Positions 24,687 to 50,663 of a stretch of 64,000 nt of DNA are shown here, piece after piece. Position numbers and translations under genes: made by a program. The notes beneath the pieces were generated by a model that saw only the letters and a list, made by a program, of their open reading frames with translations, had not been told where the DNA came from and ran no database searches. The stretch spans positions 281,070 through 345,069 of IMG/VR virus record IMGVR_UViG_3300031669_000001; one strand, given 5' to 3'. The stretch's first letter is position 1, and each line of letters begins with the position of its first letter.

Positions 24687-24763
24687 GTAATCTATTTATC
24701 TGCAAACCAACACCTCCAACCAAAACACTGACCTCTAGATACAGAGATAAGTTGAAACCATTT

Positions 24764-25860: not shown

Positions 25861-26126
25861 ACTACTTGAATCCATTATAACAAATTGATACATGAAAGTA
25901 CATTATTTATTTGCGGGCTTTTGATTCCAATAGATAGTTGCGAGCGTGAGAAGAACACCCACACCCATTCCTAGGAAAAAAGCTGTGGAGTAGCACAGCA
26001 CATACTCTAAAATGATTTCCACGTTAAGCTCCAGCGATCAGAATAGCAAATATTACGAATGCAATGAAGAAATGACCTGTCACCAGGAATAGGAGCGCTA
26101 GGACTGCTAGGATCTGGACAGTATTT

Positions 26127-27744: not shown

Positions 27745-28075
27745 CTTCTTTTTCTCCGGGAGTTAAAAAGTTGTTCCAGCAAAGTTTCATTTCTTCGTTA
27801 AACTCTAACGTTTCGACGTTGAATGGGATTATCTCTAGAGTCTCCAAATCAAGTCTATCAAACCTAATACCCATCAACTCAGCAGCGTAAACAGGAATAG
27901 GTCCATCAAAGATTCCATTATGTTCAGGAACGAAGTCGATTTGGCACTTATCACACCAAAGATGCTTCGCGTATTCTGACCACTGTGTGTTCTCATTACC
28001 ACACTTACAAGGTGCTATGTCATACTTTCTTGGTGGCTGAACGTAGCACCAAGTTCGCTTAATCAGCTCTGCCAT
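27725..28075 (-). CDS. Hypothetical Zn-ribbon protein
   Basis: CKCG ... WCDKC. Confidence 0.65.
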   Translation of the reverse strand: MAELIKRTWCYVQPPRKYDIAPCKCGNENTQWSEYAKHLWCDKCQIDFVPEHNGIFDGPIPVYAAELMGIRFDRLDLETLEIIPFNVETLEFNEEMKLCWNNFLTPGEKEDDEDCA

Positions 28076-28512
28076 GTGGCGATGACGTCTTTCGCGATGC
28101 GCGCAGCGAGTCCGCCGTCATAACGACCCTCGTATTTGAACTTTAGAATCTTGAGCATCTCACCCATTGGCTTATTGGCAACGTCGAAGCCATTCACCTT
28201 GACGATGTCGATCAGAATTTCACGAATCTTTTCTTCGGTGAGTTGTGCAGGCAGGAAAGAATTGATCAGCTCTTTTTCAGTCGTAGCATCAACGAAGCGC
28301 TCATCACCTTCTGCAAGTAGAGGAAGAATTTGATCGAGGTTCTTGATGAACTTCTTTATCACGGCAATTGTTTCTGCATCGGTCGTTTCGCGACCTTCGT
28401 TCTTACCAACCATAGTTGCTTCAGAAAGAAGTGTGATCAGAGAAGCTGCCTTCTTGGATTCGCGATTTTTGCGCGCTGTGATAGACGCGGCTTTAATGTC
28501 ATCGAGAATCAT
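28063..28512 (-). CDS. yqeY: GatB/YqeY domain protein
   Basis: ARKNRE...LITLLSE, FLPAQLTEE, MGEMLKILK...GRYDG. Confidence 0.85.
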   Translation of the reverse strand: MILDDIKAASITARKNRESKKAASLITLLSEATMVGKNEGRETTDAETIAVIKKFIKNLDQILPLLAEGDERFVDATTEKELINSFLPAQLTEEKIREILIDIVKVNGFDVANKPMGEMLKILKFKYEGRYDGGLAARIAKDVIATWQS

Positions 28513-28746
28513 ATCGCGACAGCGTCTGCGTGAATCTTGCCAGGGAATTTTCCTGTTTGTGTGATGTGAATTCCGCGCTCTTTCAGCTCACGAGTCTTTT
28601 CAACCCATTGATGACGAAGGTTACGAGTGACGCGGGATTTGCCGTAGAGAATTTGAGATTGTTTGACAAGCGCTTTTATAGAGTTCATTTTCGTTCTCAT
28701 CTAAATTAGATGAGCTATTATAACACAGAGATCCAAAAAGTACACA

Positions 28747-28778
28747 AGAAAAAGCCCCAGTCTCTTGGCGACTGAGGC
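28747..28778 (-). terminator. Intrinsic terminator
   Basis: GCCTCAGTC-GCCAAGA-GACTGGGGC followed by TTTTTCTT. Confidence 0.7.
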
Positions 28779-28810
28779 GCTGCCACGTTCCAAAGCCTTA
28801 GGCAAAGGAA

Positions 28811-29203
28811 CTATTTAAATACCGAGAGTGAAGCCTTTGCTTTTAGACCTTCATCGTTAGCGCTCTTGATGATCTTGTCGTTCTTCAAGACTACCACGTT
28901 AACTAGCTTGTACATCCCCTTCGACGCACCACTTTGATCGTGAACGCCATGAAATTCTTTACCGATATCCTTTACGTAGCTGTCATAGGCATTACCTGAG
29001 CTAGAGATGAAAGCGAAGCGATTCTTTTCATCAGGCTTCTTGCAGACTAGAATCGTATCTTCGCTATCTTTCCACTCTGAAGCTGCGGTGATAATATCTA
29101 CCGTACGACGACCGTAAAGTGCCATGGTGGCAGGAAGAATTACCCAATCACGAACTCCATAACGACGCTCGTTGAGAGTTAAAAGCTCTAGAAGTAAGTT
29201 CAT
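28811..29203 (-). CDS. Hypothetical protein, possible internal virion protein
   Basis: N-terminal MNLLLELLTLNE leader. Confidence 0.65.
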   Translation of the reverse strand: MNLLLELLTLNERRYGVRDWVILPATMALYGRRTVDIITAASEWKDSEDTILVCKKPDEKNRFAFISSSGNAYDSYVKDIGKEFHGVHDQSGASKGMYKLVNVVVLKNDKIIKSANDEGLKAKASLSVFK

Positions 29204-29694
29204 TTTGAAGCTTCCAGCGTTTCTAAGGCGCTCTTGAGAACAGCCTTACGATCAGCTGAAAGATTTTTACCTGCACGGTTGATGTAGAAGTTTAATGCAG
29301 ATACAGCACCCTTCTTATCAGCGTGAGATGACTTTAACCATTTAACGATAGCCGATGCAGAACCGTCAGCAAACAGTCCTTCTGGAGGATGCTTTTTGGT
29401 TTTAACGTCGCCAGACCACTTCAGCTCCATCAATTGTTCTAATGAAAGATCATCTTCCATGGATTCGTGAAGGCGCTTTTTAGCAGCTTCCAAAGTTGCC
29501 TTGCGATCAGCTGAGAGCTTCTTGCCGGCGCGGTTGATGTAGAAGTTGAGAGCGCCCATTGCGCTCTTAAGATCTTTGTGGGACGACTTCAACCAAGATG
29601 CGATCTCAGCAGCAGATCCAGTTGCAAAAAGATCTTCAGGTGGGTGCTTCTTTGTCTTGACGTCGCCAGACCATTTTAATTCGGATAGTAACAT
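29200..29694 (-). CDS. Tandem DUF3175-like domain protein
   Basis: Two copies of KWSGDVKTKKHPPE...ALNFYINRAGK.LSADRKA. Confidence 0.75.
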   Translation of the reverse strand: MLLSELKWSGDVKTKKHPPEDLFATGSAAEIASWLKSSHKDLKSAMGALNFYINRAGKKLSADRKATLEAAKKRLHESMEDDLSLEQLMELKWSGDVKTKKHPPEGLFADGSASAIVKWLKSSHADKKGAVSALNFYINRAGKNLSADRKAVLKSALETLEASK

Positions 29695-29749
29695 GATGGT
29701 GATCTCCTTATGCGCTTATTTACTATAGGGAGATCGAAACGCGAAAAAT

Positions 29750-30142
29750 TTACAGCAACTTAAGGTGCCCAGTTATCGCGTTAATCTTATCATTCTCTGC
29801 AGGACCAACAGAAATGCATGTATTGGTTGGAACTCCACTGAATTCTGTTAACCCACTATCAGTGATCAGCGAGCAGGTTATTCCAGCAGCTTTAGCCTTC
29901 TCTAATAGTTCAAGAAGCTCGGCTTCACTGTTAACACCGCAACAGATCTTCTTGAACACTCCTTTCATGAGCCACTCATCCATCTCAGGCGTAAGTGGGA
30001 TCATGAGGTAACGTGCTCCTCCATTGGCAACAAAAACACTTCCACTATCAACAACGGGTTTCATAGAAGCGTGAGAACCTTGGGCTACCATCTTACCCTT
30101 GCGCATGTTGAGGTCGGTCCTCATTACAATGACCTGTTTCAT
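29750..30142 (-). CDS. pth2: Peptidyl-tRNA hydrolase, Pth2 family
   Basis: KQVIVMRTDLNMRKGKMVAQGSHA, DSGLTEF, GP...ITGHLKLL. Confidence 0.93.
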   Translation of the reverse strand: MKQVIVMRTDLNMRKGKMVAQGSHASMKPVVDSGSVFVANGGARYLMIPLTPEMDEWLMKGVFKKICCGVNSEAELLELLEKAKAAGITCSLITDSGLTEFSGVPTNTCISVGPAENDKINAITGHLKLL

Positions 30143-30453
30143 TCGTATGAATCTGCCTGTACGAGGATAACTTGGAATTGATTTTTACCAAGCTTGATGT
30201 TAACGCATGAATCACCAACTATCAGCTTTGTGCCGTCCCAACCTTTCTTGCGAAGTCTAACTCCACGCTGAATCTCATCCCAGCGCTCGCGTTTTTCCCT
30301 CACAAACTTTCTATTTCCTTCTCGGTTTATCTCGGCACTTTTCTCAGGATTCTTACGGCGCCAGCGAGCATTTGCTTTTCCACCCGGAGTTTCAGGACGT
30401 ATTTCGCCTTTACGAGGGCGGCCTTTTTTGTAGCCAGTAGGTTTGTAAGCCAT
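30139..30453 (-). CDS. Basic AT-hook-like DNA-binding protein
   Basis: KKGRPRKG; highly basic. Confidence 0.65.
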   Translation of the reverse strand: MAYKPTGYKKGRPRKGEIRPETPGGKANARWRRKNPEKSAEINREGNRKFVREKRERWDEIQRGVRLRKKGWDGTKLIVGDSCVNIKLGKNQFQVILVQADSYE

Positions 30454-30464
30454 TTTTGTACTTT

Positions 30465-30512
30465 CAAAAGAAATAGGGTGTTCATTATATCATGAACACC
30501 CTACAGAGTAAA
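30465..30512 (-). terminator. Terminator hairpin overlapping the -10 box of an early promoter
   Basis: TAGGGTGTTCAT-GATATA-ATGAACACCCTA followed by TTTCTTTTG; TTTACT...TATAAT promoter embedded. Confidence 0.6.
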
Positions 30513-30744
30513 ATTTATTTACGGTTGAATGCGAAAGAATCTTACGTTGGTGAGAATTTGACCATTTGAGGTGCTGAACAAACTTCCATAACCTTCGTAA
30601 CGACAGTCTTTGAAGAGGGTTCTACCGTCTGTAATGACGGTGAATCTACTCTGTCTTTGACCGTGAACTCCATGTAGTTCAAAGTCAATTGGAGTTCCTA
30701 CTGGATATTCTTTGTCGATCTCTAGTATAATTTTTGTCATTTTT

Positions 30745-31002
30745 TTATTCGCAGCTTTGAGCTACAGCTTCAAGTTGAGCTTCATAGCCTTTACGAATTT
30801 CTATCTCGGCTAAAGCTTTCTTCGTTTTGACGAAGACGTCATCCTTTACGTCACCGGTATCTGTCAAGGGCATGACAGGTTTAGGTGGCAAAGTTACCTT
30901 GCAAGGAACCGTAACTAAAACATTGTGATCGACTATTTGTGGTTTTGTAGTTCCACAACCCACCAAAAGTAAGGCGGCTAGTATGGTTATAAGTTTCATC
31001 AT
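30745..31002 (-). CDS. Outer-membrane spanin (Rz1-like lipoprotein)
   Basis: Lipobox LLVGC, Pro-rich PCKVTLPPKP, terminal Cys. Confidence 0.8.
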   Translation of the reverse strand: MMKLITILAALLLVGCGTTKPQIVDHNVLVTVPCKVTLPPKPVMPLTDTGDVKDDVFVKTKKALAEIEIRKGYEAQLEAVAQSCE

Positions 31003-31391
31003 TTTGCTCCTGTGATGTAGTCATTGTACAGAAGATTAGCTGACACACATAAATTCGCTGGAGCTGTAGCTTGAGCTAATAGAATGTCTTGAGCTTTTTT
31101 GCTGTAGTATTTGACTTTTGCATCTGCTGCAGCGAGCGCAACTTTTGCAGCTGCTTCTCTACTTGCTGCATCTGCTGCTAACTTTGCGATAGCGTCAGAG
31201 TCAGCTCTGATTTTCAGAACGAGGCCGTCATTCTGAGATTGAAGCACCGCGGTCGCAGTTACTTGTTGTGTGTATTGCTTGTGATAGTAGTATGTACCAC
31301 CACTCAATGCAGCGATCAAAAGCATGACCGCCAAGCCGATGTAAAGTGAAGTTGATCCACCAGCGAAAAATCCGAATAGCTTGCTGAACAT
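30999..31391 (-). CDS. Inner-membrane spanin (Rz-like)
   Basis: N-terminal transmembrane helix, Ala-rich coiled coil, C-terminal Cys; TATAAATA late promoter at 31419-31426. Confidence 0.8.
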   Translation of the reverse strand: MFSKLFGFFAGGSTSLYIGLAVMLLIAALSGGTYYYHKQYTQQVTATAVLQSQNDGLVLKIRADSDAIAKLAADAASREAAAKVALAAADAKVKYYSKKAQDILLAQATAPANLCVSANLLYNDYITGAK

Positions 31392-31431
31392 TTTAGTCTC
31401 CCTATAATATAGCAAGACTATTTATACGCTT

Positions 31432-31565
31432 TGGTTGTGAAGGTAGGGATCCAACCTACATCTACTGACCCATGGAATCAGCGCTTTTAAGATCTGTATC
31501 TCGGCTACATCGTAACGGATTTTTACCGTTACTCTCTTTTTGTCGGTCACTTTAAGCTACTTCAC
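31432..31565 (-). ncRNA. tRNA-like RNA with ~60-nt D-loop expansion
   Basis: GTGAAG/CTTCAC acceptor, GCTT/AAGC D-stem, CTGAT-TCCATGG-GTCAG arm, GTAGG-TTGGATC-CCTAC T-arm, ACCA end. Confidence 0.65.
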
Positions 31566-31595
31566 TGGTGCGCTCGGGGAGACTCGAACTCCCAC
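31566..31595 (-). pseudogene. Orphan 3' half of a tRNA-Leu
   Basis: GTGGGAGTTCGAGTCTCCCCGAGCGCACCA, resembling the 3' end of the tRNA at 32122-32206. Confidence 0.7.
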
Positions 31596-31606
31596 ATACT
31601 TCTCCG

Positions 31607-32122
31607 TTAACGCGTTGATCCAATCTCCTCGAGAAGTTCTTGTAACGTGATAGATGATTTACTACTCTTCGAGGCATTTGCCTTGTGTGGAATAAACTCA
31701 CAGTTTGCAGGATGAGAGATAATCCTCGGATCTATTTGATTCTTGAATCCAAAATCTATTGATAGTCTGTGATCTCTAACGACTCCGCTAGGATTCGTCT
31801 TCCTTGAATACATTCCATACTTTACTAATAGATCATAACCTTTGATAGTTTCGATTATGCCTGCCAAATTGAAAGTGCATTGCTCTTGATAGATCATCTT
31901 TTTCAATTTTGCTTCGTCGGTAACTTTGCGTTTACCGAGTTTTGTTTCTGACATACTTTGAATTCTGGGGTGACTTTCTTTCGTGAGACCTTTTGACCAA
32001 GTAGTTTTCCCTTTATTTGGAGAAGGTATAGGTTGAAGCCCATTTCGATGAATCAGACACCACCGATAATGAGCGTTCAAAGATTGAGCATTTGGGAAGT
32101 CTCGTTCACATTTACATTTCAT
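31607..32122 (-). CDS. Zn-finger plus HNH-like putative homing endonuclease
   Basis: CKCERDF..QSLNAHYRWC; RDH...HPANC...N..K; its ATG overlaps the tRNA CCA. Confidence 0.7.
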   Translation of the reverse strand: MKCKCERDFPNAQSLNAHYRWCLIHRNGLQPIPSPNKGKTTWSKGLTKESHPRIQSMSETKLGKRKVTDEAKLKKMIYQEQCTFNLAGIIETIKGYDLLVKYGMYSRKTNPSGVVRDHRLSIDFGFKNQIDPRIISHPANCEFIPHKANASKSSKSSITLQELLEEIGSTR

Positions 32123-32206
32123 GGTGCGACTGGGGAGAGTCGAACTCCCATGCCTTTCGGCACACGGACCTCAACCGTGCGCGGCTACCAATTACGCCAC
32201 AGTCGC
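32122..32206 (-). tRNA. tRNA-Leu(GAG), long variable arm
   Basis: CACGG-TTGAGGT-CCGTG; ACCA end. Confidence 0.9.
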
Positions 32207-32208
32207 AT

Positions 32209-32508
32209 TTAGTCTTTTTTACGCCTTATAAACGTTAAGTTACTAAGCAAGATAGCTCTTTCATAATCATCTGGACCTCCAACAAGAATTGAAGTACTAG
32301 ACATTGGATCGACTTTTACTATAGCTTCATCACCATTTTTACCGTGATAGAGATATAAAACGTCACCTTCAATCTTTCCTCCAGAAGATGATTTTGGAAC
32401 TTTTATGAACGTTAATTCACCAACCTCCGGCAAAAATTCATCATCAGTTTGAACTCTATCATATATTTTCGCTTCTTCACCGCCAGCATAAGGACCAAAA
32501 TAATTCAT
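32209..32508 (-). CDS. Hypothetical protein
   Basis: 99-aa ORF with SD. Confidence 0.6.
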   Translation of the reverse strand: MNYFGPYAGGEEAKIYDRVQTDDEFLPEVGELTFIKVPKSSSGGKIEGDVLYLYHGKNGDEAIVKVDPMSSTSILVGGPDDYERAILLSNLTFIRRKKD

Positions 32509-32698
32509 TTATGATTTCCTTCTAATGTGTTACATTCCAGTAGATCCTAAATCCAGCAATTGATCTTCCAGCTACAAACACGATGGTCACATAAGGAGCT
32601 TGATCACGCAACTTACGATCTATCTGAATCGTCGGCAGTGACCAAGCCTCTGGAACGTAAGCGGTCTGTTTTGAAGTTATCTTTTGAAACTCTATCAT

Positions 32699-32911
32699 TT
32701 AGTACAACTTTGGAGGCAACAGATTCGTTGCAAGACGCTTTTGATGGCGCTTCACTGCAGATGCATGCTTGCGCTTGCGTTCTGTTGTTGGCTTCTCATA
32801 AGCTTCACGATCTCTAAGTTCATTCAGCAATCCTGTCTTCTCGACAGCTCGTTTGAACCTGCGCATTGCAGACTCAAACGATTCATGTTCTTTCACATAA
32901 ATTTTTGTCAT
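32699..32911 (-). CDS. rpsU: 30S ribosomal protein bS21
   Basis: [39 protein letters not shown]...LPPKLY. Confidence 0.95.
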
Positions 32912-33250
32912 TTATTCTCCAGTTACGCTTGGATAATCAGCATCGATCATGTCCAGATACGCTAGCGGGCTCATGCCTGGTTCCAAGATCTTGATGTTTG
33001 TGAATCCATTTTCTTCGGTGATCAGTGAATCTTTTTCGTCAATAGAACCACGAAACTTGCCATCACCTTTCTTATGCATGAGCTTTCCCTTTGGACCAGA
33101 GTCAGAGGGATCTACGGAACCCCATTGACGATGCGGATCGCCCATAGGTTCAACAAAGTATTTCTTGCCTGTACGAGGTGAATGATAGATGAAGCGACCC
33201 GTCTCATCAGTATGAGTGAGGAACTTTGTTACAATCTTGGGGTCAATCAT
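32912..33250 (-). CDS. Conserved phage hypothetical protein
   Basis: TDETGRF...RTGKKYFVEP...WGSVDP; the start may extend to 33337. Confidence 0.7.
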   Translation of the reverse strand: MIDPKIVTKFLTHTDETGRFIYHSPRTGKKYFVEPMGDPHRQWGSVDPSDSGPKGKLMHKKGDGKFRGSIDEKDSLITEENGFTNIKILEPGMSPLAYLDMIDADYPSVTGE

Positions 33251-33338
33251 TTTTCTTCTCCATATATCTTCTTCCAAGCAAGCTTCGCAGCGAGCGCGGT
33301 AAGGTACTCCATGTTTACAACTTCCAGTATCTTCCATA

Positions 33339-33464
33339 GGTGCAACGTGAGAGGACTCGAACCTCCATACTCTCCAAGTTCTTGGTTTCCCAAGGTAGTC
33401 GGATCGAACCGACGGTCTCCGGCACCGATTGGGCCGTGCCTACCCCATTGCAGGACCACGTTAC
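33339..33464 (-). ncRNA. tRNA-like RNA with two T-arms
   Basis: GTAACGTG/CACGTTGC-ACC outer stem; GTCGG-TTCGAT-CCGAC and GAGG-TTCGAGT-CCTC arms. Confidence 0.6.
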
Positions 33465-33583
33465 ATAGAATATACCATTAGAGCTGAAGCCAATCGGCAG
33501 ATACCTCTCTCTGTTTTCAGGTTCTTTCCACGGTCTATTCAAGAGCCAATCGAATTCGCGCTTATAGTAACCAATATATCTCC

Positions 33584-33673
33584 TGGCGGAAGATGGAGCA
33601 ATTGAAGCCCAACCTGTTTCCAGGTCGATCTGTTTTCGAGGCAGTCCCGGCACGCCTGTCCGGTTCATCTTCC
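33584..33673 (-). tRNA. tRNA-Ser(CGA), 8/4 fold
   Basis: GGAAGATG/CATCTTCC 8-bp acceptor, GGGC/GCTC 4-bp T-stem, loop CTCGAAA, long variable arm, GCCA. Confidence 0.8.
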
Positions 33674-34107
33674 GTGGCCAGAGGTGGTCATCCTCTGGAT
33701 GTTGCGATCTATGGGTTAGGTCTGACGAAACCTCTAAGACTCTTCTCGCGGCCCTAGTTACGTCCTGCCCCTAGCTTTGACGTTATCTTGGCATTTCCCC
33801 GGCGGGAACGGAACAACTACTGGATCTAATCCTTCACGAGTTATGCGAGTAGTACGCAATACCGTATATCGTTGCCGTGATCCACGACGGAGGTACAGTC
33901 ATCGGCTCCTCAGGTATGTCTTTGATGATGTTGCCAAGCTCGCTCTTGTACCGCCGTTCGGCCTTGAAAACGAAACCTATAGCTCAATCAAACAACACTA
34001 AGCATCCTGAACTACTACAACACTAGATTAAAGAGTGAATCTGCAGATTCGCTGCCCGACACAGTAACATCAGGGGCTGTACCGAGCAATCTTCAAACAT
34101 CATGTTA

Positions 34108-34143
34108 TGGTTGACTGCGAGGGATTCAACCTCTACGCAATCA
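34108..34143 (-). ncRNA. tRNA minihelix (acceptor stem and T-arm only)
   Basis: TGATTGC-GTA-GAGG-TTGAATC-CCTC-GCAGTCA-ACCA. Confidence 0.55.
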
Positions 34144-34146
34144 ATT

Positions 34147-34202
34147 GAGCAGCAAAATTAATGACCTTTGCTTTTATCACTGGGACGGTCAGGCAGGGAC
34201 TC
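34147..34202 (-). repeat. 56-nt element, copy A (candidate small RNA)
   Basis: 51 of 56 bases identical to 36745-36800. Confidence 0.8.
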
Positions 34203-34232
34203 AAATTCTTATTTAATCGAAGCAGCTTCGTC

Positions 34233-34508
34233 TTAGTAATGCTCGCGAGTTACGCTGTACTGCTTTTTTGCTTCTGGGTTAGGAACGCGTTCACCTTCAG
34301 GATTTTCTTCGGTTACATTGATAACCATCGTGAAGTATTCTTCTTCTTTTTGTTTCTTCAACGCATTTGCTTCTCCAACCGTCAAGCATTGTTTCGGACC
34401 GAAAACATATTTGCTACACTTTTTATCCATATCAATGGTTGGATTGCCGTTACGATCTTGTGGACCGTCAGGATGCAATTGCATTACTGATACATGGTAA
34501 GTTGCCAT
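34233..34508 (-). CDS. Hypothetical protein
   Basis: 91-aa ORF downstream of the early promoter at 34542-34570. Confidence 0.65.
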   Translation of the reverse strand: MATYHVSVMQLHPDGPQDRNGNPTIDMDKKCSKYVFGPKQCLTVGEANALKKQKEEEYFTMVINVTEENPEGERVPNPEAKKQYSVTREHY

Positions 34509-34576
34509 TGTTGTGTACTTTCATGTGTAGTTGAGATGATCATTATAACACAAAGAACAAAAAAGTACACATCATT

Positions 34577-34654
34577 TGGTGCGAGTGGAGGGATTCGAAC
34601 CCACACTGTACGACTTCTAAAGCCGTTGCCTCCTACCAATTGCGCTACACTCGC
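34577..34654 (-). tRNA. tRNA-Leu(TAG), short variable arm
   Basis: ACGGC-TTTAGAA-GTCGT; ACCA. Confidence 0.88.
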
Positions 34655-34744
34655 GGCAGAGAATACCAGAATCGAACTGGAAGCCCTCGCGGGCTCACAT
34701 CGCTTTCCAAGCGAGCCTTGTCGACCAGACAAGGATTATTCTCT
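34655..34744 (-). tRNA. tRNA-Ser(GGA), 8/4 fold
   Basis: AGAGAATA/TATTCTCT acceptor, CCAG/CTGG T-stem, 7-bp D-stem, loop TTGGAAA; ends G-CC abutting the next tRNA. Confidence 0.8.
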
Positions 34745-34766
34745 ATTTGTTGTTCCTTAGTAAGCA

Positions 34767-34852
34767 TGGTGGGTGTGAGAGGATTCGAACCTTTCAATGC
34801 TTGCGCGCCGGCATATTGGCCGGTGGGAATCACCATTTCCCCTAGACTACCC
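34767..34852 (-). ncRNA. tRNA-like RNA with 6-nt anticodon loop (anticodon undetermined)
   Basis: CCGGC-CAATAT-GCCGG; bulged acceptor; intact TTCGAAT loop and ACCA. Confidence 0.6.
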
Positions 34853-34853
34853 A

Positions 34854-34937
34854 TGGTGCCGCCGAAGGGATTCGAACCCTCAATGGCCGAAGCTCTCAAC
34901 CTCGTAACTGTGCCAGATTTGTATTAGCCACAGCGGC
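34854..34937 (-). tRNA. tRNA-Leu(GAG), short variable arm, enlarged D-loop
   Basis: CGAGG-TTGAGAG-CTTCG; ACCA. Confidence 0.8.
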
Positions 34938-34938
34938 A

Positions 34939-35562
34939 TTATTTGTTGCTTCTAATACTTTCCACCGTTCCCGGTGACATGTCTCTCATCTGAACTGCTA
35001 ACGCTTTCAACCTCTTGAAAGATGTTGGTAAGCAGTTGTCAGGAACATCTCCAGCCTGTTCAACGATCAGAGCAGCCATCTCACCAAATAGTAACACAGG
35101 CAGGTGAGTCTTACGCATCATGTCATCATGCTTCGCTCCGTCGATCAAAACTCCATTCGCGTGAGTTACGATCTCGTTGCTTATCATTCTGAACAGTTCA
35201 ATAACCTTCGAGCTGTCCCTCGTTGAATGTGTTACGATGCAGGTCCTACCTTCTTTTGGACTGTTAGGCCCAAACATAGGGTGAATTCCTGTAACGTGAT
35301 CACTGTGCGTTAAACAGATCTCGTTAGATCTCCGCTGAACTGAACAAACGTTGATTAGGTGCTTTCCAACGTGCCTTACTGCAACTTCATCAAATGCAGA
35401 GATCGGAACTGCTAGGATGATAAAATCGGCGTCATCTTCATCTACGATCTTGGCGTGTGATTCCAATTCCCTCTTCAAGAATGAACCAAACACTCCCATA
35501 CCAACTATGGCGATCTTCATCTCTGTTGGTGGTGCAGCCGAAAATGGACCTGTATCGTTCAT
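34939..35562 (-). CDS. tyrA: Prephenate dehydrogenase-like protein
   Basis: KIAIVGMGVFG, IILAVP, NVCSVQ, GIHPMFGP, HDDMM; SD GAGGTG before 35562. Confidence 0.82.
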   Translation of the reverse strand: MNDTGPFSAAPPTEMKIAIVGMGVFGSFLKRELESHAKIVDEDDADFIILAVPISAFDEVAVRHVGKHLINVCSVQRRSNEICLTHSDHVTGIHPMFGPNSPKEGRTCIVTHSTRDSSKVIELFRMISNEIVTHANGVLIDGAKHDDMMRKTHLPVLLFGEMAALIVEQAGDVPDNCLPTSFKRLKALAVQMRDMSPGTVESIRSNK

Positions 35563-35585
35563 GATGCACCTCTGGTTATAAAAAT

Positions 35586-35660
35586 TGGCGGGCCTGCAGG
35601 GAATCGAACCCCGCTGTTCGGTTTTGGAGACCGACATAATAGCCGATATATGACAAGCCC
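35586..35660 (-). tRNA. tRNA-Trp(CCA)
   Basis: TCGGT-CTCCAAA-ACCGA; GCCA. Confidence 0.85.
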
Positions 35661-35774
35661 GGTCCGAGGAGCGGGGTTCGAACCCGCATGCCATAGGCGG
35701 GAGATTTTGAGAAACATTCACGTTAGTAAATGTTTGAAAAAGTCTCCTGAGTATACCAGTTTCTCCACCCTCGG
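35661..35774 (-). tRNA. tRNA-Leu(CAA) with ~31-nt insertion/intron in the anticodon loop
   Basis: GGAGA-CT[TTTTCAAACATTTACTAACGTGAATGTTTCT]CAAAA-TCTCC; otherwise a canonical class II body. Confidence 0.75.
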
Positions 35775-35800
35775 ATCAACGTTTCTTTTGGTGCGATATT

Positions 35801-36523
35801 TCAAATTCCAATAGCAAATTTCAAATCTTCACAATCTATCAATCTAATCTTTCCAGAAATAAATTTGGAATAATTTCCAATATTCTTTTCATCTCTAATC
35901 AAATAAATTTTGATATCTGGATGATCTTTAAAAACTTTTTGATATTTTACAATATCTCTTTGTGATAACCAACCTTTGACTTCAATAAAAACATTTTCAA
36001 AAATAGAGAAATCTGGCGTATAAATTTTATGATCCCCATATTTGATTCTTGGCCGAGATATCGAATAACCTAATTCTAAAAGTTTTAATCCTACATTGTA
36101 CTCCCATGTTCCTTGAACTTTAATTCCACCAACTTCAAACCATTTAATATGCGGAGAAGTTTCTAGATATTTAATTCTAGCTTCTGAGATTTTTCTTTTT
36201 GCATCTTCAGAAAGATTAAATCTTCTTCCTAGATTACCTTTACTTATTTTTCTTCTTGTCTCTTCGTGATTTGAAACAATTTCTTCTAATTTCTTTCCCT
36301 TAAATTTGCTAAGTTTGCCTTTGAATCCTGATGGTTCTGGGATTTTGCCATCTCTATGAATTAAACACCATCTATAATGAGAATTTAACGATTGAGAATT
36401 TAAGAATTCCCGTCCACAATCACATTTTAATTCAAACAATAAATTATGAACAATCCTACGATGTTTATTCAAATTTCCATTTGATGAAAATTTTTTATTG
36501 CAATCTTTACATTTTAGATCCAT
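35801..36523 (-). CDS. Zn-finger plus PD-(D/E)xK putative homing endonuclease
   Basis: C2H2 fingers, NUMOD3-like segment, YTPDF..IEVKGW; AT-rich; TATAAATA at 36529-36536. Confidence 0.8.
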   Translation of the reverse strand: MDLKCKDCNKKFSSNGNLNKHRRIVHNLLFELKCDCGREFLNSQSLNSHYRWCLIHRDGKIPEPSGFKGKLSKFKGKKLEEIVSNHEETRRKISKGNLGRRFNLSEDAKRKISEARIKYLETSPHIKWFEVGGIKVQGTWEYNVGLKLLELGYSISRPRIKYGDHKIYTPDFSIFENVFIEVKGWLSQRDIVKYQKVFKDHPDIKIYLIRDEKNIGNYSKFISGKIRLIDCEDLKFAIGI

Positions 36524-36561
36524 AAATCTATTTATAGAAGACCATAGAGTATACCGAATTC

Positions 36562-36648
36562 TGGTGCGCGATGTCGGACTCGAACCGACACGCCCGTGAG
36601 GACCCCGACGTCTAAAGACGGGAAGACTACCAATTCCATCAATCGCGC
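36562..36648 (-). tRNA. tRNA-Leu(TAG), long variable arm
   Basis: Loop TTTAGAC; ACCA. Confidence 0.85.
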
Positions 36649-36655
36649 TTACTTC

Positions 36656-36739
36656 TGGTACCCTCGACCGGATTCGAACCGGTAAAAACTCTAGATTTTA
36701 AATCTAGCGGCTGTGCCAATTTACCTAAGTCACGAGGGC
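36656..36739 (-). tRNA. tRNA-Leu(TAA), short variable arm, enlarged D-loop
   Basis: CTAGA-TTTAAAA-TCTAG; ACCA. Confidence 0.82.
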
Positions 36740-36744
36740 ACATA

Positions 36745-36800
36745 GAGCAGCAATATTTACGACCTTTGCTTTTATCACTGGGACGGTCAAGCAGAGACTC
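36745..36800 (-). repeat. 56-nt element, copy B (candidate small RNA)
   Basis: Fills the gap between tRNA-Trp and tRNA-Leu; matches 34147-34202. Confidence 0.8.
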
Positions 36801-36804
36801 TATT

Positions 36805-36878
36805 TGGCAGGCTGTGAAGGAATCGAACCCTCGTCCGGAGTTTTGGAGGCTCCGTCATTACCACTATGTTAACAACCC
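36805..36878 (-). tRNA. tRNA-Trp(CCA)
   Basis: Loop CTCCAAA; GCCA. Confidence 0.85.
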
Positions 36879-36969
36879 GGCGGAAGATGGCGGATTCGAA
36901 CCCCCTAACCCTTTAACAGGATCAAACAGTTTTCAAGACTGTGCTGCTCTCCGAGACAGTAGATCTTCC
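36879..36969 (-). tRNA. tRNA-Ser(TGA)
   Basis: ACAGT-CTTGAAA-ACTGT, long variable arm; ends G-CC. Confidence 0.85.
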
Positions 36970-37056
36970 GGCGGAAGGTCAGGGAATCGAACCCTCAACC
37001 CTTCCGGGTTGGCGACGGCTTTCAAAACCGTTTGTGTACCATACACGCTACAATCC
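36970..37056 (-). tRNA. tRNA-Ser(TGA) with two acceptor-stem mismatches
   Basis: ACGGT-TTTGAAA-GCCGT; acceptor GGATTGT/ACCTTCC. Confidence 0.7.
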
Positions 37057-37155
37057 GGTGGGCATCCGTGGAGTTACACCACGATTAAGTCTCGTTTTGA
37101 GGCGAGAGGTCGCTGATCTGGCGACTGAGGCAGTTATTACCATCGCTAGATGCCC
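37057..37155 (-). ncRNA. tRNA-like RNA with an extra hairpin
   Basis: GGGCATC/GATGCCC-ACC; GTCGC-CAGATCA-GCGAC and TCTCG-CCTCAAAA-CGAGA arms; CGTGG-TGTAACT-CCACG. Confidence 0.6.
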
Positions 37156-37159
37156 ATAT

Positions 37160-37249
37160 TGGTGGATCACGGACGGAATCGAACCTCATGCCCAGAGGGA
37201 GAAGCTTTACAGGCTTCCGACAGCACCAGCAGTCCTTATTACGCGATCC
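37160..37249 (-). tRNA. tRNA-Tyr(GTA), atypical D-arm
   Basis: GAAGC-CTGTAAA-GCTTC; TAATAAG linker then GACTGC-TGGT-GCTGTC. Confidence 0.78.
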
Positions 37250-37254
37250 ATGTT

Positions 37255-37860
37255 CTAAATCAATTTCAATTCTTTTAGCTTCTTTTTATCCCAGAACTCA
37301 AATTTCACATCAGGATATTTCATTTGCCATTCTTCAAACTTTTCTTTATTAGCTGGTCTCCAATAACCTTTCACTTCAATAATTGTTCCATCTTCTAGAA
37401 CAAAATCTGGTCTGTAAGATCGTTTTCCGTCTAACTTGAAAACAACTTCTCCGTACTTCCAACTAATATCTTGTTCATCAAGATATTTTGCAACTTTTAC
37501 TTCCCAGCTAGAATCCATTCTAATGTTCTTGTAAAGAGATTGTCTATCTCCTCGATGATTTCCGTTCTTATTTCCAATCATCTTTTTTGCAATCTTTTCA
37601 CACGTTGTAAGCGAATGGCTTTTATTCTTGAAAGCTGCGTCATGATCTAGTAGATGACGTTTTACTCCTTCTGAAATATTGCCTATTCTTGGGTCTGTAA
37701 ATTTATTCAATCCTTTAGACCATCCACGATTTAAGAAAATTTTATCGCGAAATTCTTTACTCTTTGGATTTTCTAAGCACCATCTTGTATGATTTGCTTT
37801 CTTCGACTTATCCGCCGAGCTAAATTCAAATTCATTGCTGCAAAATTTACATTTCCACAT
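37255..37860 (-). CDS. Zn-finger plus PD-(D/E)xK putative homing endonuclease
   Basis: CKFC..NHTRWC; DSSWE, YRPDF, IIEVKGY; CATAAATA upstream. Confidence 0.8.
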   Translation of the reverse strand: MWKCKFCSNEFEFSSADKSKKANHTRWCLENPKSKEFRDKIFLNRGWSKGLNKFTDPRIGNISEGVKRHLLDHDAAFKNKSHSLTTCEKIAKKMIGNKNGNHRGDRQSLYKNIRMDSSWEVKVAKYLDEQDISWKYGEVVFKLDGKRSYRPDFVLEDGTIIEVKGYWRPANKEKFEEWQMKYPDVKFEFWDKKKLKELKLI

Positions 37861-37907
37861 ATCTTTTCTCCTGAAACTATTTATGGAAACGGGTTAAACT
37901 AACTAAT

Positions 37908-37996
37908 TGGTCCCCTCAGCCGGATTCGAACCGGCAATACACTTACGTGGCTCTGCAGTCTGAGTGCAGCGACTTTACCAATTTGCCCATGAGGGG
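37908..37996 (-). tRNA. tRNA-Leu(CAG)
   Basis: CTGCA-CTCAGAC-TGCAG; ACCA. Confidence 0.9.
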
Positions 37997-38006
37997 AAAG
38001 TCTATT

Positions 38007-38091
38007 TGGTGCGTCTGCCTGGAATCGAACCAAGATGATCAGAGATAACCGGGTTACAGCCGGTGCCGCCTCCATAACGGTCTACAAACGC
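38007..38091 (-). tRNA. tRNA-Tyr(GTA)
   Basis: ACCGG-CTGTAAC-CCGGT; ACCA. Confidence 0.85.
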
Positions 38092-38092
38092 T

Positions 38093-38181
38093 TGGTGAGT
38101 TGGTAGTGAATCGAACACTATGCCCTAGGGAAGAGTTTTACAGACTCCTGACAGCACCAGCTATCCTTATTGAACCAACTC
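38093..38181 (-). tRNA. tRNA-Tyr(GTA), atypical D-arm
   Basis: GGAGT-CTGTAAA-ACTCT; TTCAATAAG linker then GATAGC-TGGT-GCTGTC. Confidence 0.78.
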
Positions 38182-38184
38182 CAT

Positions 38185-38262
38185 TGGTACCCACGATCGG
38201 ATTCGAACCGACACTGTGTAGTTTTTGAAACTACTGCCTCCTACCAATTGCGCTACGTGGGC
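38185..38262 (-). tRNA. tRNA-Leu(CAA), short variable arm
   Basis: GTAGT-TTCAAAA-ACTAC; ACCA. Confidence 0.88.
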
Positions 38263-38266
38263 ATTC

Positions 38267-38355
38267 TGGTGGAAGGCTGAGTAATCGAAACCCAATCCCT
38301 TTCGGGATCGATCTGTTTAGCAAACAGTCACCGAGACCTCTCGGTTTAACCTTCC
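38267..38355 (-). tRNA. tRNA-Ser(GCT)
   Basis: Loop TTGCTAA, long variable arm GATCCC-GAAA-GGGATT; ACCA. Confidence 0.85.
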
Positions 38356-38386
38356 ATACAACCAAATTTTTAAAGATCTTACTTCT

Positions 38387-38418
38387 AAAACAACAAAGGC
38401 TACCAACTTGGTAGCCTT
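38387..38418 (-). terminator. Attenuator terminator (3:4) ahead of the tRNA array
   Basis: AAGGCTACC-AAGTT-GGTAGCCTT followed by TGTTGTTTT. Confidence 0.8.
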
Positions 38419-38443
38419 AGCTTAATTCGAGAGAAACTTTACT

Positions 38444-38536
38444 TCAAATTCCAGGCTTCTCGCAATCGCTAAGGCTCTTCGTCCACAGATAGGACGATGA
38501 GAGCAAACTTAGATATAAAGAGGAAGTCGTTTTCAT
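38444..38536 (-). CDS. Putative attenuator leader peptide MKTTSSLYLSLLSSSYLWTKSLSDCEKPGI
   Basis: 30 codons; codons 5-18 are exclusively Ser/Leu/Tyr/Trp; overlaps alternative hairpins. Confidence 0.78.
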   Translation of the reverse strand: MKTTSSLYLSLLSSSYLWTKSLSDCEKPGI

Positions 38537-38544
38537 GATAAGTT

Positions 38545-38617
38545 TATTTATATGGGTGCAAAAGTTTTTAAAATTTGACAGTAAAAGCATTATAACATGG
38601 TCTGGAAGAATGTACAC
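38545..38617 (-). promoter_or_regulatory. Tandem early (sigma70-like) and late (TATAAATA) promoters of the tRNA operon
   Basis: GTGTAC...TGTTATAAT at 38617-38589; TATAAATA at 38552-38545. Confidence 0.7.
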
Positions 38618-38790
38618 TTATTTTTGAATCTTTTTTGGCATCTCTCCAGAAGGAACCGGCTTGGTCGGAAACAGCATCGTGCTCATTCGAACATTATCAC
38701 CGATAGTTTGAAAGATCATGCCGCCATTACCATAGATGCGAACTGTTCCATCTTGATGGACCTGAACTTCAACATGAAGAAAGTGTTCCA

Positions 38791-39075
38791 TCATTTCCAG
38801 AGCTTACACTTTGGAAGTTCAGCGAATTCGAATGAATAAACTCTAGCATCGAATATGTGTGTTTCAGTTGTGAGCTTTCCTTCTTGAAAGTGAGCACAAG
38901 CTTTAATGCAATTACCTTTTTGAAAAGGACAACTGGCGCTAAGCATCTTCGTTTCAGCTGTGCTGATCGCAGCGAGTCTCTTTTTCGTCATCTCGGCTTT
39001 ACGAGCTTCTTCGAGCTTTTTCTCGGTAAGCTTTTTAAGCTTTCGCTTTTCAAAAAAGTTTTTGATCAATTTCAT
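38791..39075 (-). CDS. Hypothetical protein
   Basis: 94-aa ORF just after the early promoter at 39082-39110. Confidence 0.6.
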   Translation of the reverse strand: MKLIKNFFEKRKLKKLTEKKLEEARKAEMTKKRLAAISTAETKMLSASCPFQKGNCIKACAHFQEGKLTTETHIFDARVYSFEFAELPKCKLWK

Positions 39076-39129
39076 TCGGCCATTATAACACCACTCTGCA
39101 AAAAGTACACTAATTTGTGTAAATAGAAG

Positions 39130-39504
39130 ATGATATTTTCAGAACTTCTTTTCGAATACTCTTCTGCAAACCCATTCGTTGGGATCGTCTCGATGATAGA
39201 TCTCCGAATTCGCCAAGTAGGAGCAGCGGCTCATGCAAGCAACCATACGTCAGTGTTCATCTCTTCACTTAAAAACCAGCTCAACACTCTCCTCAAATTC
39301 CTGGATTCAGGATCTAATTGGAACGTTCCAGAGCCTAAGCTGAGATCAGACTTACACGCTGCTCTGCCTGAAGTCAAGCGCCACGTCAACGCAGCAATTT
39401 CAGCGTTGACGGCCGGCGATGTAAATAAAGCTAGAGGCCAACTCCTTGCAGCTCGTAAAGTTGCAGTGAAAAGATCTCACCTACAATTTGGGGACATTGA
39501 ATGA
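39130..39504 (+). CDS. Hypothetical late protein
   Basis: TGTAAATA upstream; MIFSELLFE leader. Confidence 0.65.
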   Translation: MIFSELLFEYSSANPFVGIVSMIDLRIRQVGAAAHASNHTSVFISSLKNQLNTLLKFLDSGSNWNVPEPKLRSDLHAALPEVKRHVNAAISALTAGDVNKARGQLLAARKVAVKRSHLQFGDIE

Positions 39505-39725
39505 ATCTATCTCAAGCTAACAAGCAGACGCTGGCAACTTACTGCGCGACAGGTGGAAAGGTTTATGAAGTTGCTTACGATCCAACAATAGTTGGAACTA
39601 AAGGCGGAACATCTACTCCTGAAGCGGATGCGATCGCTGCAGGTTTAATCCAATGGCACAAAGAATCCACGACAAATTTAATAGAAGTGATCTACACTTC
39701 AAGCGTCTGTCCTGCTTACGTATGA
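39501..39725 (+). CDS. Hypothetical protein
   Basis: ATGA overlaps on both sides. Confidence 0.65.
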   Translation: MNLSQANKQTLATYCATGGKVYEVAYDPTIVGTKGGTSTPEADAIAAGLIQWHKESTTNLIEVIYTSSVCPAYV

Positions 39726-49184: not shown

Positions 49185-49200
49185 TAGCAGGGAATTTGAC

Positions 49201-50661: not shown

Positions 50662-50663
50662 TC

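What the first reader, a model, noticed from the sequence alone, without database searches (positions are those of the whole stretch)
33675..34107. About 430 nt of non-coding, hairpin-rich sequence bracketed by CCA-ended mini-stems
Seen: there is no long minus-strand ORF in an otherwise dense genome. The segment follows a minihelix ending ACCA and ends with CCAGAGG-ATGACCA-CCTCTGG-CCA one base before tRNA-Ser. It contains GCCGAACG...CTTGGC, resembling the Ro60-binding helix of bacterial Y RNAs. A further ~110-nt gap (33470-33583) carries CGATTGGCT twice. Inference: one large or several small ncRNAs released by tRNA processing.
Basis: inference. Interest (0 to 1): 0.6.

Follow-up and report, generated by a model that had tools for sequence, protein, structure and literature searches.

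The report
Abundant structured phage RNA beside tRNAs
Inside the tRNA gene cluster of a 345-kb soil jumbo phage lies a gene for a folded RNA of about 390 bases that makes no protein, keeps its base pairs in related phages, and is about fifty times more abundant than neighbouring messages in a soil RNA sample. Its function is unknown.

Summary
The main inference, one large ncRNA, holds; several details do not.

- **Not coding.** Window 33675-34107 has stops in all six frames in every homologue, and the indels are not multiples of three.
- **Expressed.** A soil metatranscriptome holds a contig identical to window 33703-34089 at depth 275. Flanking phage mRNA contigs are at 3.5-5.4 and the adjacent tRNA-like pieces at 0. 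A sequencing adapter is fused at the 33703 end.
- **Conserved and structured.** Four more lineages carry it (L018, L022, L023-25 and IMG/VR record G005). Base-pair-preserving changes occur in many helices, including a long-range pseudoknot.
- **No known family.** Nothing in Rfam matches at E<=10.
- **Modular.** In G005 the two domains sit in separate units between tRNAs.
- **Flanks.** The 3' hairpin is conserved where tRNA-Ser follows. Its CCA tail (ACA in L022) and the ACCA minihelix are lineage-specific.
- **Ro60 helix.** The helix as drawn is not supported and the motif occurs at chance frequency. Yet the phage does encode a Ro60/Rsr orthologue 17 kb away, and the only other phage record with that protein also has this RNA.

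Best reading: a new, stable, ornate phage ncRNA cut out of the tRNA operon, function unknown.

The parts
33703..34089 (-). Mature non-coding RNA as seen in RNA data, about 387 nt. The 5' end is near 34089 and the 3' end is at 33703 or 33704.
   Evidence: record 12 of RNA run X2: a 411-nt contig made of 24 nt of Illumina adapter plus window 33703-34089, with 0 differences, at depth 275.2. Neighbouring phage contigs are at 3.5-5.4 and 33340-33702 and 34090-34146 are at 0. No ORF is conserved.
34052..34088 (-). 5'-terminal 11-bp hairpin, present only in the window and L018.
   Evidence: MFE and centroid. In L018 a G-to-A change turns a U.G pair into U-A. Absent in L022 and L023.
33874..34050 (-). 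5' domain. It contains hairpin H1 (34050-34037); hairpin X (34016-34001), whose loop 34011-34006 pairs with 33914-33909 (pseudoknot PK1); helix 33973-33967/33946-33940; candidate pseudoknot PK2 (33967-33963 with 33938-33934); and helix 33906-33899/33880-33874.
   Evidence: PK1 is 100% paired in 5 sequences, with two adjacent pairs changed on both sides in G005. Seven of 35 pairs are compensatory, matched by 0 of 500 shuffles.
33705..33871 (-). 3' domain: a multi-branch fold closed by helix 33871-33868/33708-33705. The RNA ends 1-2 nt after this helix.
   Evidence: Covariance model R1 and alignment A7 of 5 sequences: 96% of cells paired, 9 of 46 pairs compensatory, matched by 0 of 500 shuffles; slid controls give 0-2. 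Single copy in the genome.
33675..33698 (-). 7-bp G+C-rich hairpin (33698-33678) plus CCA (33677-33675). It lies outside the abundant RNA and one base before tRNA-Ser. Candidate processing signal.
   Evidence: the stem is invariant in 4 lineages, one loop position varies, and CCA is ACA in L022. G005 unit B has a non-homologous hairpin in the same place before its tRNA. No RNA coverage.
33584..33673 (-). tRNA-Ser(CGA)-like gene of class II, with a 4-bp T stem, a C.A mismatch at 31-39 and an encoded CCA.
   Evidence: cloverleaf with 14 of 28 pairs compensatory. 90% identical over 51 nt to unannotated tRNA-Ser genes of Caulobacter phiCbK-like phages. Missed by ARAGORN and Rfam.
34108..34143 (-). 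tRNA minihelix (acceptor-like stem, T-like arm, ACCA), upstream of the RNA. Present only in the window and L018.
   Evidence: L018 changes G to A, turning a U.G pair into U-A. Absent in L022, L023 and G005.
34145..34204 (-). Conserved structured leader element of about 60 nt. A second copy lies at 36800-36745 and a third in G005.
   Evidence: (91% identical second copy). The closing stem covaries (UUGAG/CUCAA, AUAGAG/CUCUAU, CAUGAGG/CCUCAUG) and 4 of 14 pairs are compensatory. The second copy is transcribed as a tRNA spacer (record 13).
33466..33583 (-). Spacer with the 9-nt repeat. Dispensable and not part of the RNA.
   Evidence: Deleted exactly in L018. No RNA coverage. The repeat is at chance level.
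33339..33464 (-). 126-nt tRNA-like RNA with an 8-bp acceptor stem, a D arm, no anticodon loop, two T-arm-like hairpins and an ACC end.
   Evidence: 33 pairs, 7 of them compensatory, across the window, L018 and L026.
34541..34551 (-). Extended -10 promoter-like motif TGTGTTATAAT upstream of the 91-aa gene. Candidate start of the transcript that runs into the RNA (inferred).
   Evidence: Sequence read. The 8-mers TGTGTTAT and GTGTTATA are 13-fold enriched upstream of the phage's ORFs. The consensus scan found no sigma-70 site in 32800-35000.

Best explanation
Window 34089-33703 (minus strand) is the gene of a stable, highly expressed, two-domain, pseudoknotted non-coding RNA of about 387 nt that belongs to the tRNA operon of a 345-kb soil jumbo phage.

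**Shown**
- It does not code for protein.
- It is conserved, with base-pair-preserving changes.
- It is abundant as RNA.
- Its ends fall between the flanking tRNA-like elements.

**Inferred**
- It is transcribed together with the upstream 91-aa gene, the leader element and the minihelix.
- The host's tRNA-maturation nucleases cut it free. RNase P would cut at tRNA-Ser and probably at the tailed hairpin. An RNase E-type cut would fall in the A/U-rich stretch after the ACCA minihelix.
- It then persists because both ends sit against helices.
- It most likely acts in trans as a folded scaffold or decoy for a protein of the phage's translation and RNA-repair module. The candidate named here is the phage's own Ro60/Rsr. 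This last step is a guess.
For: **Expression and ends.**: depth 275 against 3.5-5.4 for the flanks, adapter fused at 33703, and no coverage of the flanking tRNA-like pieces.

**Non-coding.**: at least 4 stops in every frame of every homologue, and indels of 1, 2, 8, 11, 12 and 34 nt.

**Conservation.** 75-89% identity over the core in L018, L022 and L023. A divergent copy in G005 scores 63 bits, E 5e-15.

**Structure.**
- 11 of 92 pairs are compensatory.
- In the 3' domain, 9 of 46 pairs are compensatory.
- In the 5' domain, 7 of 35 pairs are compensatory, including pseudoknot PK1.

**Operon context.** tRNAs or tRNA-like elements flank every unit.

**Module context.** The same window holds a permuted tmRNA and a bS21 gene. 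A CCA-adding-enzyme family gene lies elsewhere in the genome. A TROVE/Rsr gene lies at window 50664-52214, and the only IMG/VR relative of that Rsr also has the RNA.
Against: - The RNA evidence comes from assembled contigs of one small run, not raw reads. The strand is inferred only from adapter orientation, the 5' end is only a contig end, and no silent control stretch could be laid.
- MFE is no lower than in shuffles.
- Only five lineages are known, all fairly close, and the structures were derived from the same alignments that were then counted.
- The minihelix, the 5' hairpin and the CCA tail are not conserved, so they cannot be essential to maturation.
- The observed 3' end lies 4-5 nt upstream of where RNase P would cut the hairpin.
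- A related lineage (L026/L016) has tRNA-Ser without the RNA.
- Nothing bears directly on function. The co-occurrence with Rsr rests on two related phages.
Confidence: 0.6

Rival explanations
1. It is a giant Y-RNA-like partner of the phage's Ro60/Rsr protein, tethering or gating that ring protein as bacterial YrlA and Yrn1 do.
For: - The genome encodes a TROVE/Rsr orthologue at window 50664-52214.
- The one other IMG/VR record with a close Rsr (67% aa identity) also carries the RNA about 15 kb away.
- GCCGAACG fits the GNCGAAN0-1G motif of PMC4201824.
- The RNA sits among tRNA-like elements.
- No canonical YrlA was found anywhere in the genome, so the Rsr partner is still unassigned.
Against: - The motif is at chance frequency, lies about 128 nt from the 5' end, and is lost in L022 and G005.
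- No T- or D-arm module is visible and no RF02553 hit occurs at E<=10.
- The RNA is three to four times larger than known Y RNAs.
- It lies 16.6 kb from rsr, not adjacent.
- Co-occurrence in two related phages is simply shared ancestry.
Confidence: 0.12
2. It is a cis-acting leader that controls maturation or yield of the tRNA that follows it, and it accumulates only as a by-product.
For: The core plus hairpin is always immediately upstream of a tRNA: tRNA-Ser in four lineages, and tRNA-Leu or an odd tRNA in G005.
Against: - A by-product would not be expected to keep about 170 nt per domain of covarying structure and a pseudoknot, or to outnumber mRNAs 50-fold.
- The downstream tRNA differs between lineages.
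- The L026 lineage makes the same tRNA-Ser without it.
Confidence: 0.1
3. It is an RNA-only self-assembling particle of the GOLLD/ROOL kind, a large ornate phage RNA beside tRNA islands.
For: - It has the same genomic habitat, phage tRNA islands.
- It has a complex pseudoknotted fold with long invariant unpaired stretches.
- It is very abundant.
- Hairpin H1 has a self-complementary loop in two independent lineages: UGCA in the window and GGCC in L022 and G005.
Against: - No Rfam match to GOLLD, ROOL, OLE or raiA at E<=10.
- It is about half the size of ROOL.
- The H1 loop is not self-complementary in L023.
- No evidence on multimers is available.
Confidence: 0.08
4. It is a functionless transcribed spacer or the decayed remains of tRNA genes or a lost ORF.
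For: - MFE is not unusual.
- The flanks contain decayed or odd tRNA-like pieces.
- The L026 lineage has a 57-aa ORF in the same place, and L023 has a copy of that ORF with an in-frame TAG.
Against: - Its identity matches that of the neighbouring protein gene (77-82% against 75-77%).
- Compensatory changes occur in many helices.
- Indels arrive as self-contained hairpins.
- It is very abundant as RNA.
Confidence: 0.05
5. It encodes one or more small proteins.
For: Short ATG frames of 26 aa (from 34103) and 22 aa (33902-33834) exist.
Against: The first starts outside the RNA and is frameshifted in L018. The second loses its ATG in L022. All frames are closed in all homologues.
Confidence: 0.02

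Closest known systems
GOLLD and ROOL RNAs (large ornate RNAs of phages and prophages)
   Same: Phage-encoded, located at tRNA islands, large for a bacterial-world ncRNA, multi-helix pseudoknotted fold, function unknown (bioRxiv 10.1101/2024.12.08.627333).
   Different: No sequence or structure match in Rfam. About 390 nt, against more than 800 nt for many GOLLD RNAs and about 580 nt for ROOL (from memory). Known so far only in a handful of soil jumbo-phage contigs. Multimer formation untested.
Phage T4 RNA C and RNA D (species 1 and 2 RNAs of the T4 tRNA region)
   Same: Stable non-tRNA RNAs transcribed from the tRNA region of a T4-like phage, with roles still unknown (PMC3014915). This phage is T4-like in that it has an rIIA homologue.
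   Different: The T4 RNAs are described as small, about 120-140 nt from memory. No BLAST similarity was found to any of 50,697 phage records apart from the tRNA-Ser part.
Bacterial Y RNAs (YrlA, Yrn1) with Ro60/Rsr
   Same: A Ro60 orthologue is encoded in the same phage. The context is tRNA-like, and a GNCGAANG motif is present. Some Y RNAs are cut by RNase P and receive CCA (PMC4201824).
   Different: The motif is at chance level and not conserved. There is no tRNA-like T/D module and no model hit. The RNA is far larger and not adjacent to rsr.
MALAT1-mascRNA type maturation (3' end made by RNase P at a downstream tRNA-like structure)
   Same: A long stable RNA whose 3' end lies just upstream of a tRNA or tRNA-like element. 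This comparison rests on general knowledge.
   Different: That is a eukaryotic nuclear system. Here the observed end is about 30 nt upstream of the tRNA, with a hairpin in between, and cleavage has not been shown.

Membership tests
Bacterial Y RNA / YrlA (Rfam RF02553) | Match to the YrlA covariance model (tRNA-like T and D arms plus the stem) | tested here: not met
   No hit at E<=10 in 33200-34600. The genome-wide RF02553 search gives only weak tRNA-type hits elsewhere, the best at 30 bits against a gathering score of 69.
Bacterial Y RNA / YrlA (Rfam RF02553) | GNCGAAN0-1G motif near the 5' end, conserved | tested here: not met
   Present at 33962-33955 but about 128 nt from the 5' end. The motif occurs 294 times in the genome against about 337 expected. 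It reads GCCTTACG in L022 and is absent in G005.
Bacterial Y RNA / YrlA (Rfam RF02553) | Encoded next to an rsr (Ro60/TROVE) gene | tested here: inconclusive
   rsr exists at 50664-52214 but lies 16.6 kb away. The spacing is similar in G005.
Bacterial Y RNA / YrlA (Rfam RF02553) | Bound by Rsr | not testable with these tools
   Needs immunoprecipitation or a gel shift.
GOLLD / ROOL / OLE / raiA large RNAs | Match to the family covariance model | tested here: not met
   cmscan of all 4227 Rfam families with permissive filters at E<=10 returned only two unrelated chance hits.
GOLLD / ROOL / OLE / raiA large RNAs | Located in phage or prophage tRNA islands | tested here: met
GOLLD / ROOL / OLE / raiA large RNAs | Homo-oligomeric assembly | not testable with these tools
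   Needs biophysics or cryo-EM.
T4 RNA C / RNA D | Sequence similarity to the T4 tRNA-region stable RNAs | tested here: not met
   blastn at word size 11 against 50,697 phage records found only the tRNA-Ser segment, in Caulobacter phages.
T4 RNA C / RNA D | Stable RNA made from the tRNA transcription unit of a T4-like phage | tested here: inconclusive
   Abundant RNA between tRNA-like genes. Co-transcription and processing are inferred, not shown.
Group I intron / RNase P RNA | Model match, plus exon context for the intron or the P4 core motifs for RNase P | tested here: not met
   No Rfam hit. L022 has no upstream exon-like sequence. The RNA is more abundant than its flanks.
tRNA (for the flanking 33673-33584 element) | Cloverleaf with covariation and an anticodon loop | tested here: met
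   14 of 28 pairs compensatory, a CUCGAAA loop and a long variable arm. It scores below the ARAGORN and Rfam thresholds.

The most novel reading that the evidence does not exclude
This would be the founding member of a new class of ornate, pseudoknotted, modular phage RNAs that are cut out of tRNA operons and serve as the RNA partner of a phage-encoded Ro60 ring protein. In effect it would be a 'giant Y RNA' used during host take-over or RNA repair. Alternatively, it could form an RNA-only assembly like ROOL or GOLLD.
Probability: 0.15. Interest if true: 0.8.

Novelty: new variant of a known kind. Interest (0 to 1): 0.66.

Why it matters
Large, highly structured RNAs of unknown function beside phage tRNA islands (GOLLD, ROOL, T4 RNA C and D) remain an open problem. 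This is a further, unrelated family in the same habitat. It comes with direct evidence of very high expression in nature, a covariation-supported pseudoknot, and two domains that can be split between separate units.

It sits in a phage that also encodes a Ro60 orthologue, a tmRNA, ribosomal protein bS21, a CCA-adding enzyme and dozens of tRNAs. That makes it a candidate RNA component of the translation and RNA-repair toolkit of jumbo phages. It is small enough (about 390 nt) for structure probing or cryo-EM.

Tried and rejected
- **Rfam.** The gathering-threshold scan of the whole window and E<=10 scans of 33200-34600, 24000-40000 and 46000-58000 gave nothing for the region.
- **YrlA model genome-wide.** Only weak tRNA-type hits.
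- **GNCGAANG motif.** At chance level.
- **Thermodynamic stability.** Not significant.
- **Promoter and terminator consensus scan.** No promoter, and terminators only at chance level.
- **Repeats.** Nothing beyond chance except the 56-nt element.
- **Coding.** Rejected.
- **Group I intron, RNase P RNA and anti-Shine-Dalgarno mimicry.** Considered by eye. Dropped for lack of a model match or conservation.
- **Gap upstream of rsr as a Y RNA site.** It holds an ORF tail, a terminator-like hairpin and a ribosome-binding site.
- **Homologue hunts that failed.**
  - The 91-aa protein alone found nothing in viral contigs.
  - Four IMG/VR relatives of the 112-aa protein and CcrRogue lack the RNA by BLAST, nhmmer and CM.
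  - Loci L020, L021, L029-L032 and L045 lack it.
  - Exact-pattern scans of viral contigs, genome contigs and metagenome contigs returned only the source contig.
- **Caveat on those negatives.** A later pattern that G005 demonstrably contains also returned nothing. Negatives from the pattern scans are therefore unreliable.
- **P0002 contig.** Its DNA could not be fetched.

Full report
**Setting.** The window is bases 281070-345069 of a 345,069-bp IMG/VR virus record with direct terminal repeats, from soil. The phage is T4-like in having an rIIA homologue. Around the finding all genes run on the minus strand. ARAGORN and Rfam find a permuted tmRNA and about a dozen tRNAs between 25 and 38 kb. 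Low-G+C homing-endonuclease-like ORFs are interspersed among them. A bS21 gene lies at 32699-32911.

**The observation.**
- On the minus strand the 91-aa gene ends at 34233.
- Next comes a 60-nt conserved element (34204-34145), then a tRNA minihelix ending in ACCA (34143-34108).
- Then comes the ORF-free stretch.
- Then a 7-bp hairpin (33698-33678) is followed by CCA and one spacer base.
- A class-II tRNA-Ser(CGA)-like gene follows (33673-33584). The tRNA finders miss it. It folds as a cloverleaf with 14 of 28 pairs changed on both sides among six homologues. Its first 51 nt are 90% identical to one of three unannotated tRNA-Ser genes in Caulobacter phiCbK-like phages.
- 'Hairpin-rich' is not. 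The MFE is no lower than that of dinucleotide shuffles, with z-scores of +0.26 and +0.36.
- The 9-nt repeat in the 110-nt gap is one of seven such short direct-repeat families in 1.1 kb.
- That gap is deleted exactly in L018, where tRNA-Ser abuts the next tRNA-like RNA. It has no RNA coverage.

**It is an RNA, and an abundant one.**
- One soil metatranscriptome (X2) holds this phage. Five of its contigs match protein-coding flanks with 0 differences at depth 3.5-5.4.
- One 411-nt contig equals window 33703-34089 with 0 differences at depth 275.
- No contig covers 33340-33702 or 34090-34146, which hold the tRNA-like pieces, hairpin and minihelix. These would be lost as small RNAs.
- At the 33703 end the contig runs into the Illumina read-1 adapter. 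Many short inserts must therefore end exactly there. Because the adapter's last T coincides with the base at 33703, the end is 33703 or 33704.
- The adapter orientation fits a minus-strand RNA in a dUTP-type library. That is my inference, because contigs do not give strand.
- The 3' end lies 1-2 nt after the helix that closes the 3' domain (33871-33868 with 33708-33705) and 4-5 nt before the hairpin.
- The 5' contig end (34089) lies 19 nt after the minihelix's ACCA, at GA|UU in an A/U-rich stretch, and at the foot of an 11-bp hairpin. An RNase E-type cut there is inferred from general knowledge of that enzyme's preference.

**It is conserved and not coding.**
- I found relatives through the flanking proteins and fetched their contigs.
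  - L018 is 94.5% identical over 979 nt.
  - L022 is 82% identical.
  - L023, L024 and L025 are 77% identical.
- The neighbouring 91-aa gene is 75-77% identical at the DNA level in L022 and L023-25, so the RNA is at least as constrained as coding sequence.
- Every frame of every homologue has 4-10 stops, and indels are 1, 2, 8, 11, 12 and 34 nt long.
- The 34-nt insertion of L022 is a self-contained hairpin.
- L018 differs from the window mostly in the 3' half, where it resembles L022. This looks like a recombination mosaic.

**Structure.**
- RNAalifold on the four-sequence core gives 92 pairs, 11 of them with changes on both sides.
- The count gives 96.7% of cells paired and a covariation score of 0.230, against 0.162 in shuffles (matched by 0 of 500). 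Slid registers give 0-2 compensatory pairs.
- A covariance model of the 3' domain (R1) finds a single copy in the phage.
- I found a fifth lineage only after noticing the Ro60 gene. The sole IMG/VR relative of that protein (L047, record G005) carries an R1 hit of 63 bits, E 5e-15.
- With five sequences the 3' domain has 9 of 46 compensatory pairs, matched by 0 of 500 shuffles.
- In the 5' domain, the loop of hairpin X (34011-34006) pairs with 33914-33909, about 95 nt downstream. In G005 two adjacent pairs of this helix changed on both sides (A-U to G-C, G-C to U-A), while the hairpin stem itself also covaries. This is a pseudoknot.
- A second crossing helix (33967-33963 with 33938-33934) is kept in four of five lineages.
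- These structures were derived from the alignments they were counted on, and five related sequences are few. The pseudoknot and helices 4, 16 and 17 are the best supported.

**Modularity and what is essential.** In G005 the order on the coding strand is as follows:
1. A 96-aa homologue of the 91-aa gene.
2. The 60-nt leader element.
3. About 170 nt of unrelated sequence.
4. tRNA-Ser(UGA).
5. About 170 nt of unrelated sequence plus the 3'-domain homologue.
6. tRNA-Leu(UAG).
7. A unit with the 5'-domain homologue and only a stub of the 3' domain.
8. A different G+C-rich hairpin.
9. An odd tRNA.

The two domains are therefore separable modules, and each unit lies between tRNAs.

- The ACCA minihelix and the 5' hairpin exist only in the window and L018.
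- The CCA after the 3' hairpin is ACA in L022.
- The L026/L016 lineage has the same tRNA-Ser preceded by a 57-aa ORF and no RNA. L023 keeps a copy of that ORF with an in-frame TAG upstream of the RNA.
- 'Bracketed by CCA-ended mini-stems' therefore describes this phage, not the family.
- What is constant is a folded RNA followed by a hairpin and a tRNA.

**What it is not.**
- No Rfam family matches at E<=10. That set includes GOLLD, ROOL, OLE, raiA, RNase P, group I introns, 6S, SRP and YrlA.
- No phage record other than the tRNA-Ser match shows similarity.
- There is no paralogue in the genome.

**The Ro60 thread.**
Chen et al. define the bacterial motif as GNCGAAN0-1G near the 5' end, next to a tRNA-like module, in RNAs encoded beside rsr (PMC4201824).
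- The octamer fits, but the motif is as frequent as chance in this genome. It is internal and is lost in two lineages. No YrlA-like module is present.
- On the other hand, the phage really does encode a TROVE/Rsr protein (window 50664-52214; 89.9 bits). A few jumbo phages are known to do so (PMC7824862).
- No canonical Y RNA was found in the genome, and the only other record with that Rsr has the RNA.
- I therefore keep 'Rsr partner' as a minority hypothesis of about 0.12. It is not a membership claim.

**Mechanism proposed (inferred).**
- Transcription starts upstream, perhaps at the TGTGTTATAAT motif at 34551-34541. Its 8-mers are 13-fold enriched before this phage's ORFs.
- The precursor runs through the leader element, the minihelix, the RNA, the hairpin and tRNA-Ser.
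- RNase P cuts at the tRNA, and possibly at the tailed hairpin, which resembles minimal RNase P substrates (general knowledge).
- An RNase E-type cut follows the minihelix, and exonucleases trim back to the closing helices.
- The compact RNA accumulates. Its trans function is unknown.

**Novelty.** This is a new RNA family of a known kind: a large structured RNA of unknown function in a phage tRNA island. It stands out for natural-sample expression evidence, a covarying pseudoknot and domain modularity.

Noticed in passing
window 50664-52214 (-): A 516-aa TROVE-domain protein, a Ro60/Rsr orthologue, is encoded by the phage. No canonical YrlA RNA was found in the genome. Its 67%-identical relative in L047 spans 2251 nt for 516 aa, so that copy seems to be interrupted by an insertion of about 700 nt.
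   Followed up: partly
window 33339-33464 (-): A 126-nt tRNA-like RNA with an 8-bp acceptor stem, a D arm, a short hairpin instead of an anticodon arm, two T-arm-like hairpins and an ACC end. It is conserved, with 7 compensatory pairs, in L018 and L026. No tRNA finder calls it.
   Followed up: partly
window 34145-34204 (-) and 36745-36800 (-); L048 2119-2166 (-): A structured element of about 60 nt has a near-invariant interior and a covarying closing stem. It is found after the 91/96-aa gene and between tRNA-Trp and a tRNA-Leu(UAA)-like gene. It is transcribed as a spacer in the metatranscriptome. Its function is unknown.
   Followed up: partly
L003 2770-3048 (Caulobacter phage CcrRogue, record 51055-51335 region): Three tandem class-II tRNA-Ser genes (anticodons CGA, GGA, GCT) and further tRNA-like elements lie in a 1.1-kb stretch of the phiCbK-like tRNA cluster that carries no annotation.
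   Followed up: partly
window 25486-25868 (-), 32699-32911 (-); genome 207991-208350; genome 223-241 kb: The phage carries a permuted tmRNA, a ribosomal protein bS21 gene, a gene of the CCA-adding-enzyme family, and a second large tRNA island with 39 tRNA genes called in the five loci scanned, including odd ones such as an anticodon call of '???'.
   Followed up: no
window 31607-32122, 35801-36523, 37255-37860 (-): Low-G+C (27-37%) ORFs with zinc-finger or endonuclease signatures sit between tRNA genes. They look like homing endonuclease insertions, as with segB in the T4 tRNA region.
   Followed up: no
L018 1165-1345 vs window 33890-33705: L018 is 98-100% identical to the window in the flanks but about 18% different in the 3' half of the RNA, where it resembles L022. 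This is a recombination mosaic inside the RNA gene.
   Followed up: partly
L023 1461-1640; L026 1064-1237: A 57-aa ORF lies between the 75-aa gene and tRNA-Ser in L026. L023 has a homologue with a CAG-to-TAG change, directly upstream of the RNA core.
   Followed up: no
Viral contigs pattern scan: A degenerate pattern that the G005 sequence (L048 1555-1585) fits exactly returned no hit. Negative results from the collection pattern scans should not be taken as absence.
   Followed up: no
window 34939-35721 (-): The 260-aa ORF call overlaps tRNA-Trp (35586-35660). The real gene is probably shorter and has a weak prephenate-dehydrogenase-like N-terminal domain match.
   Followed up: no
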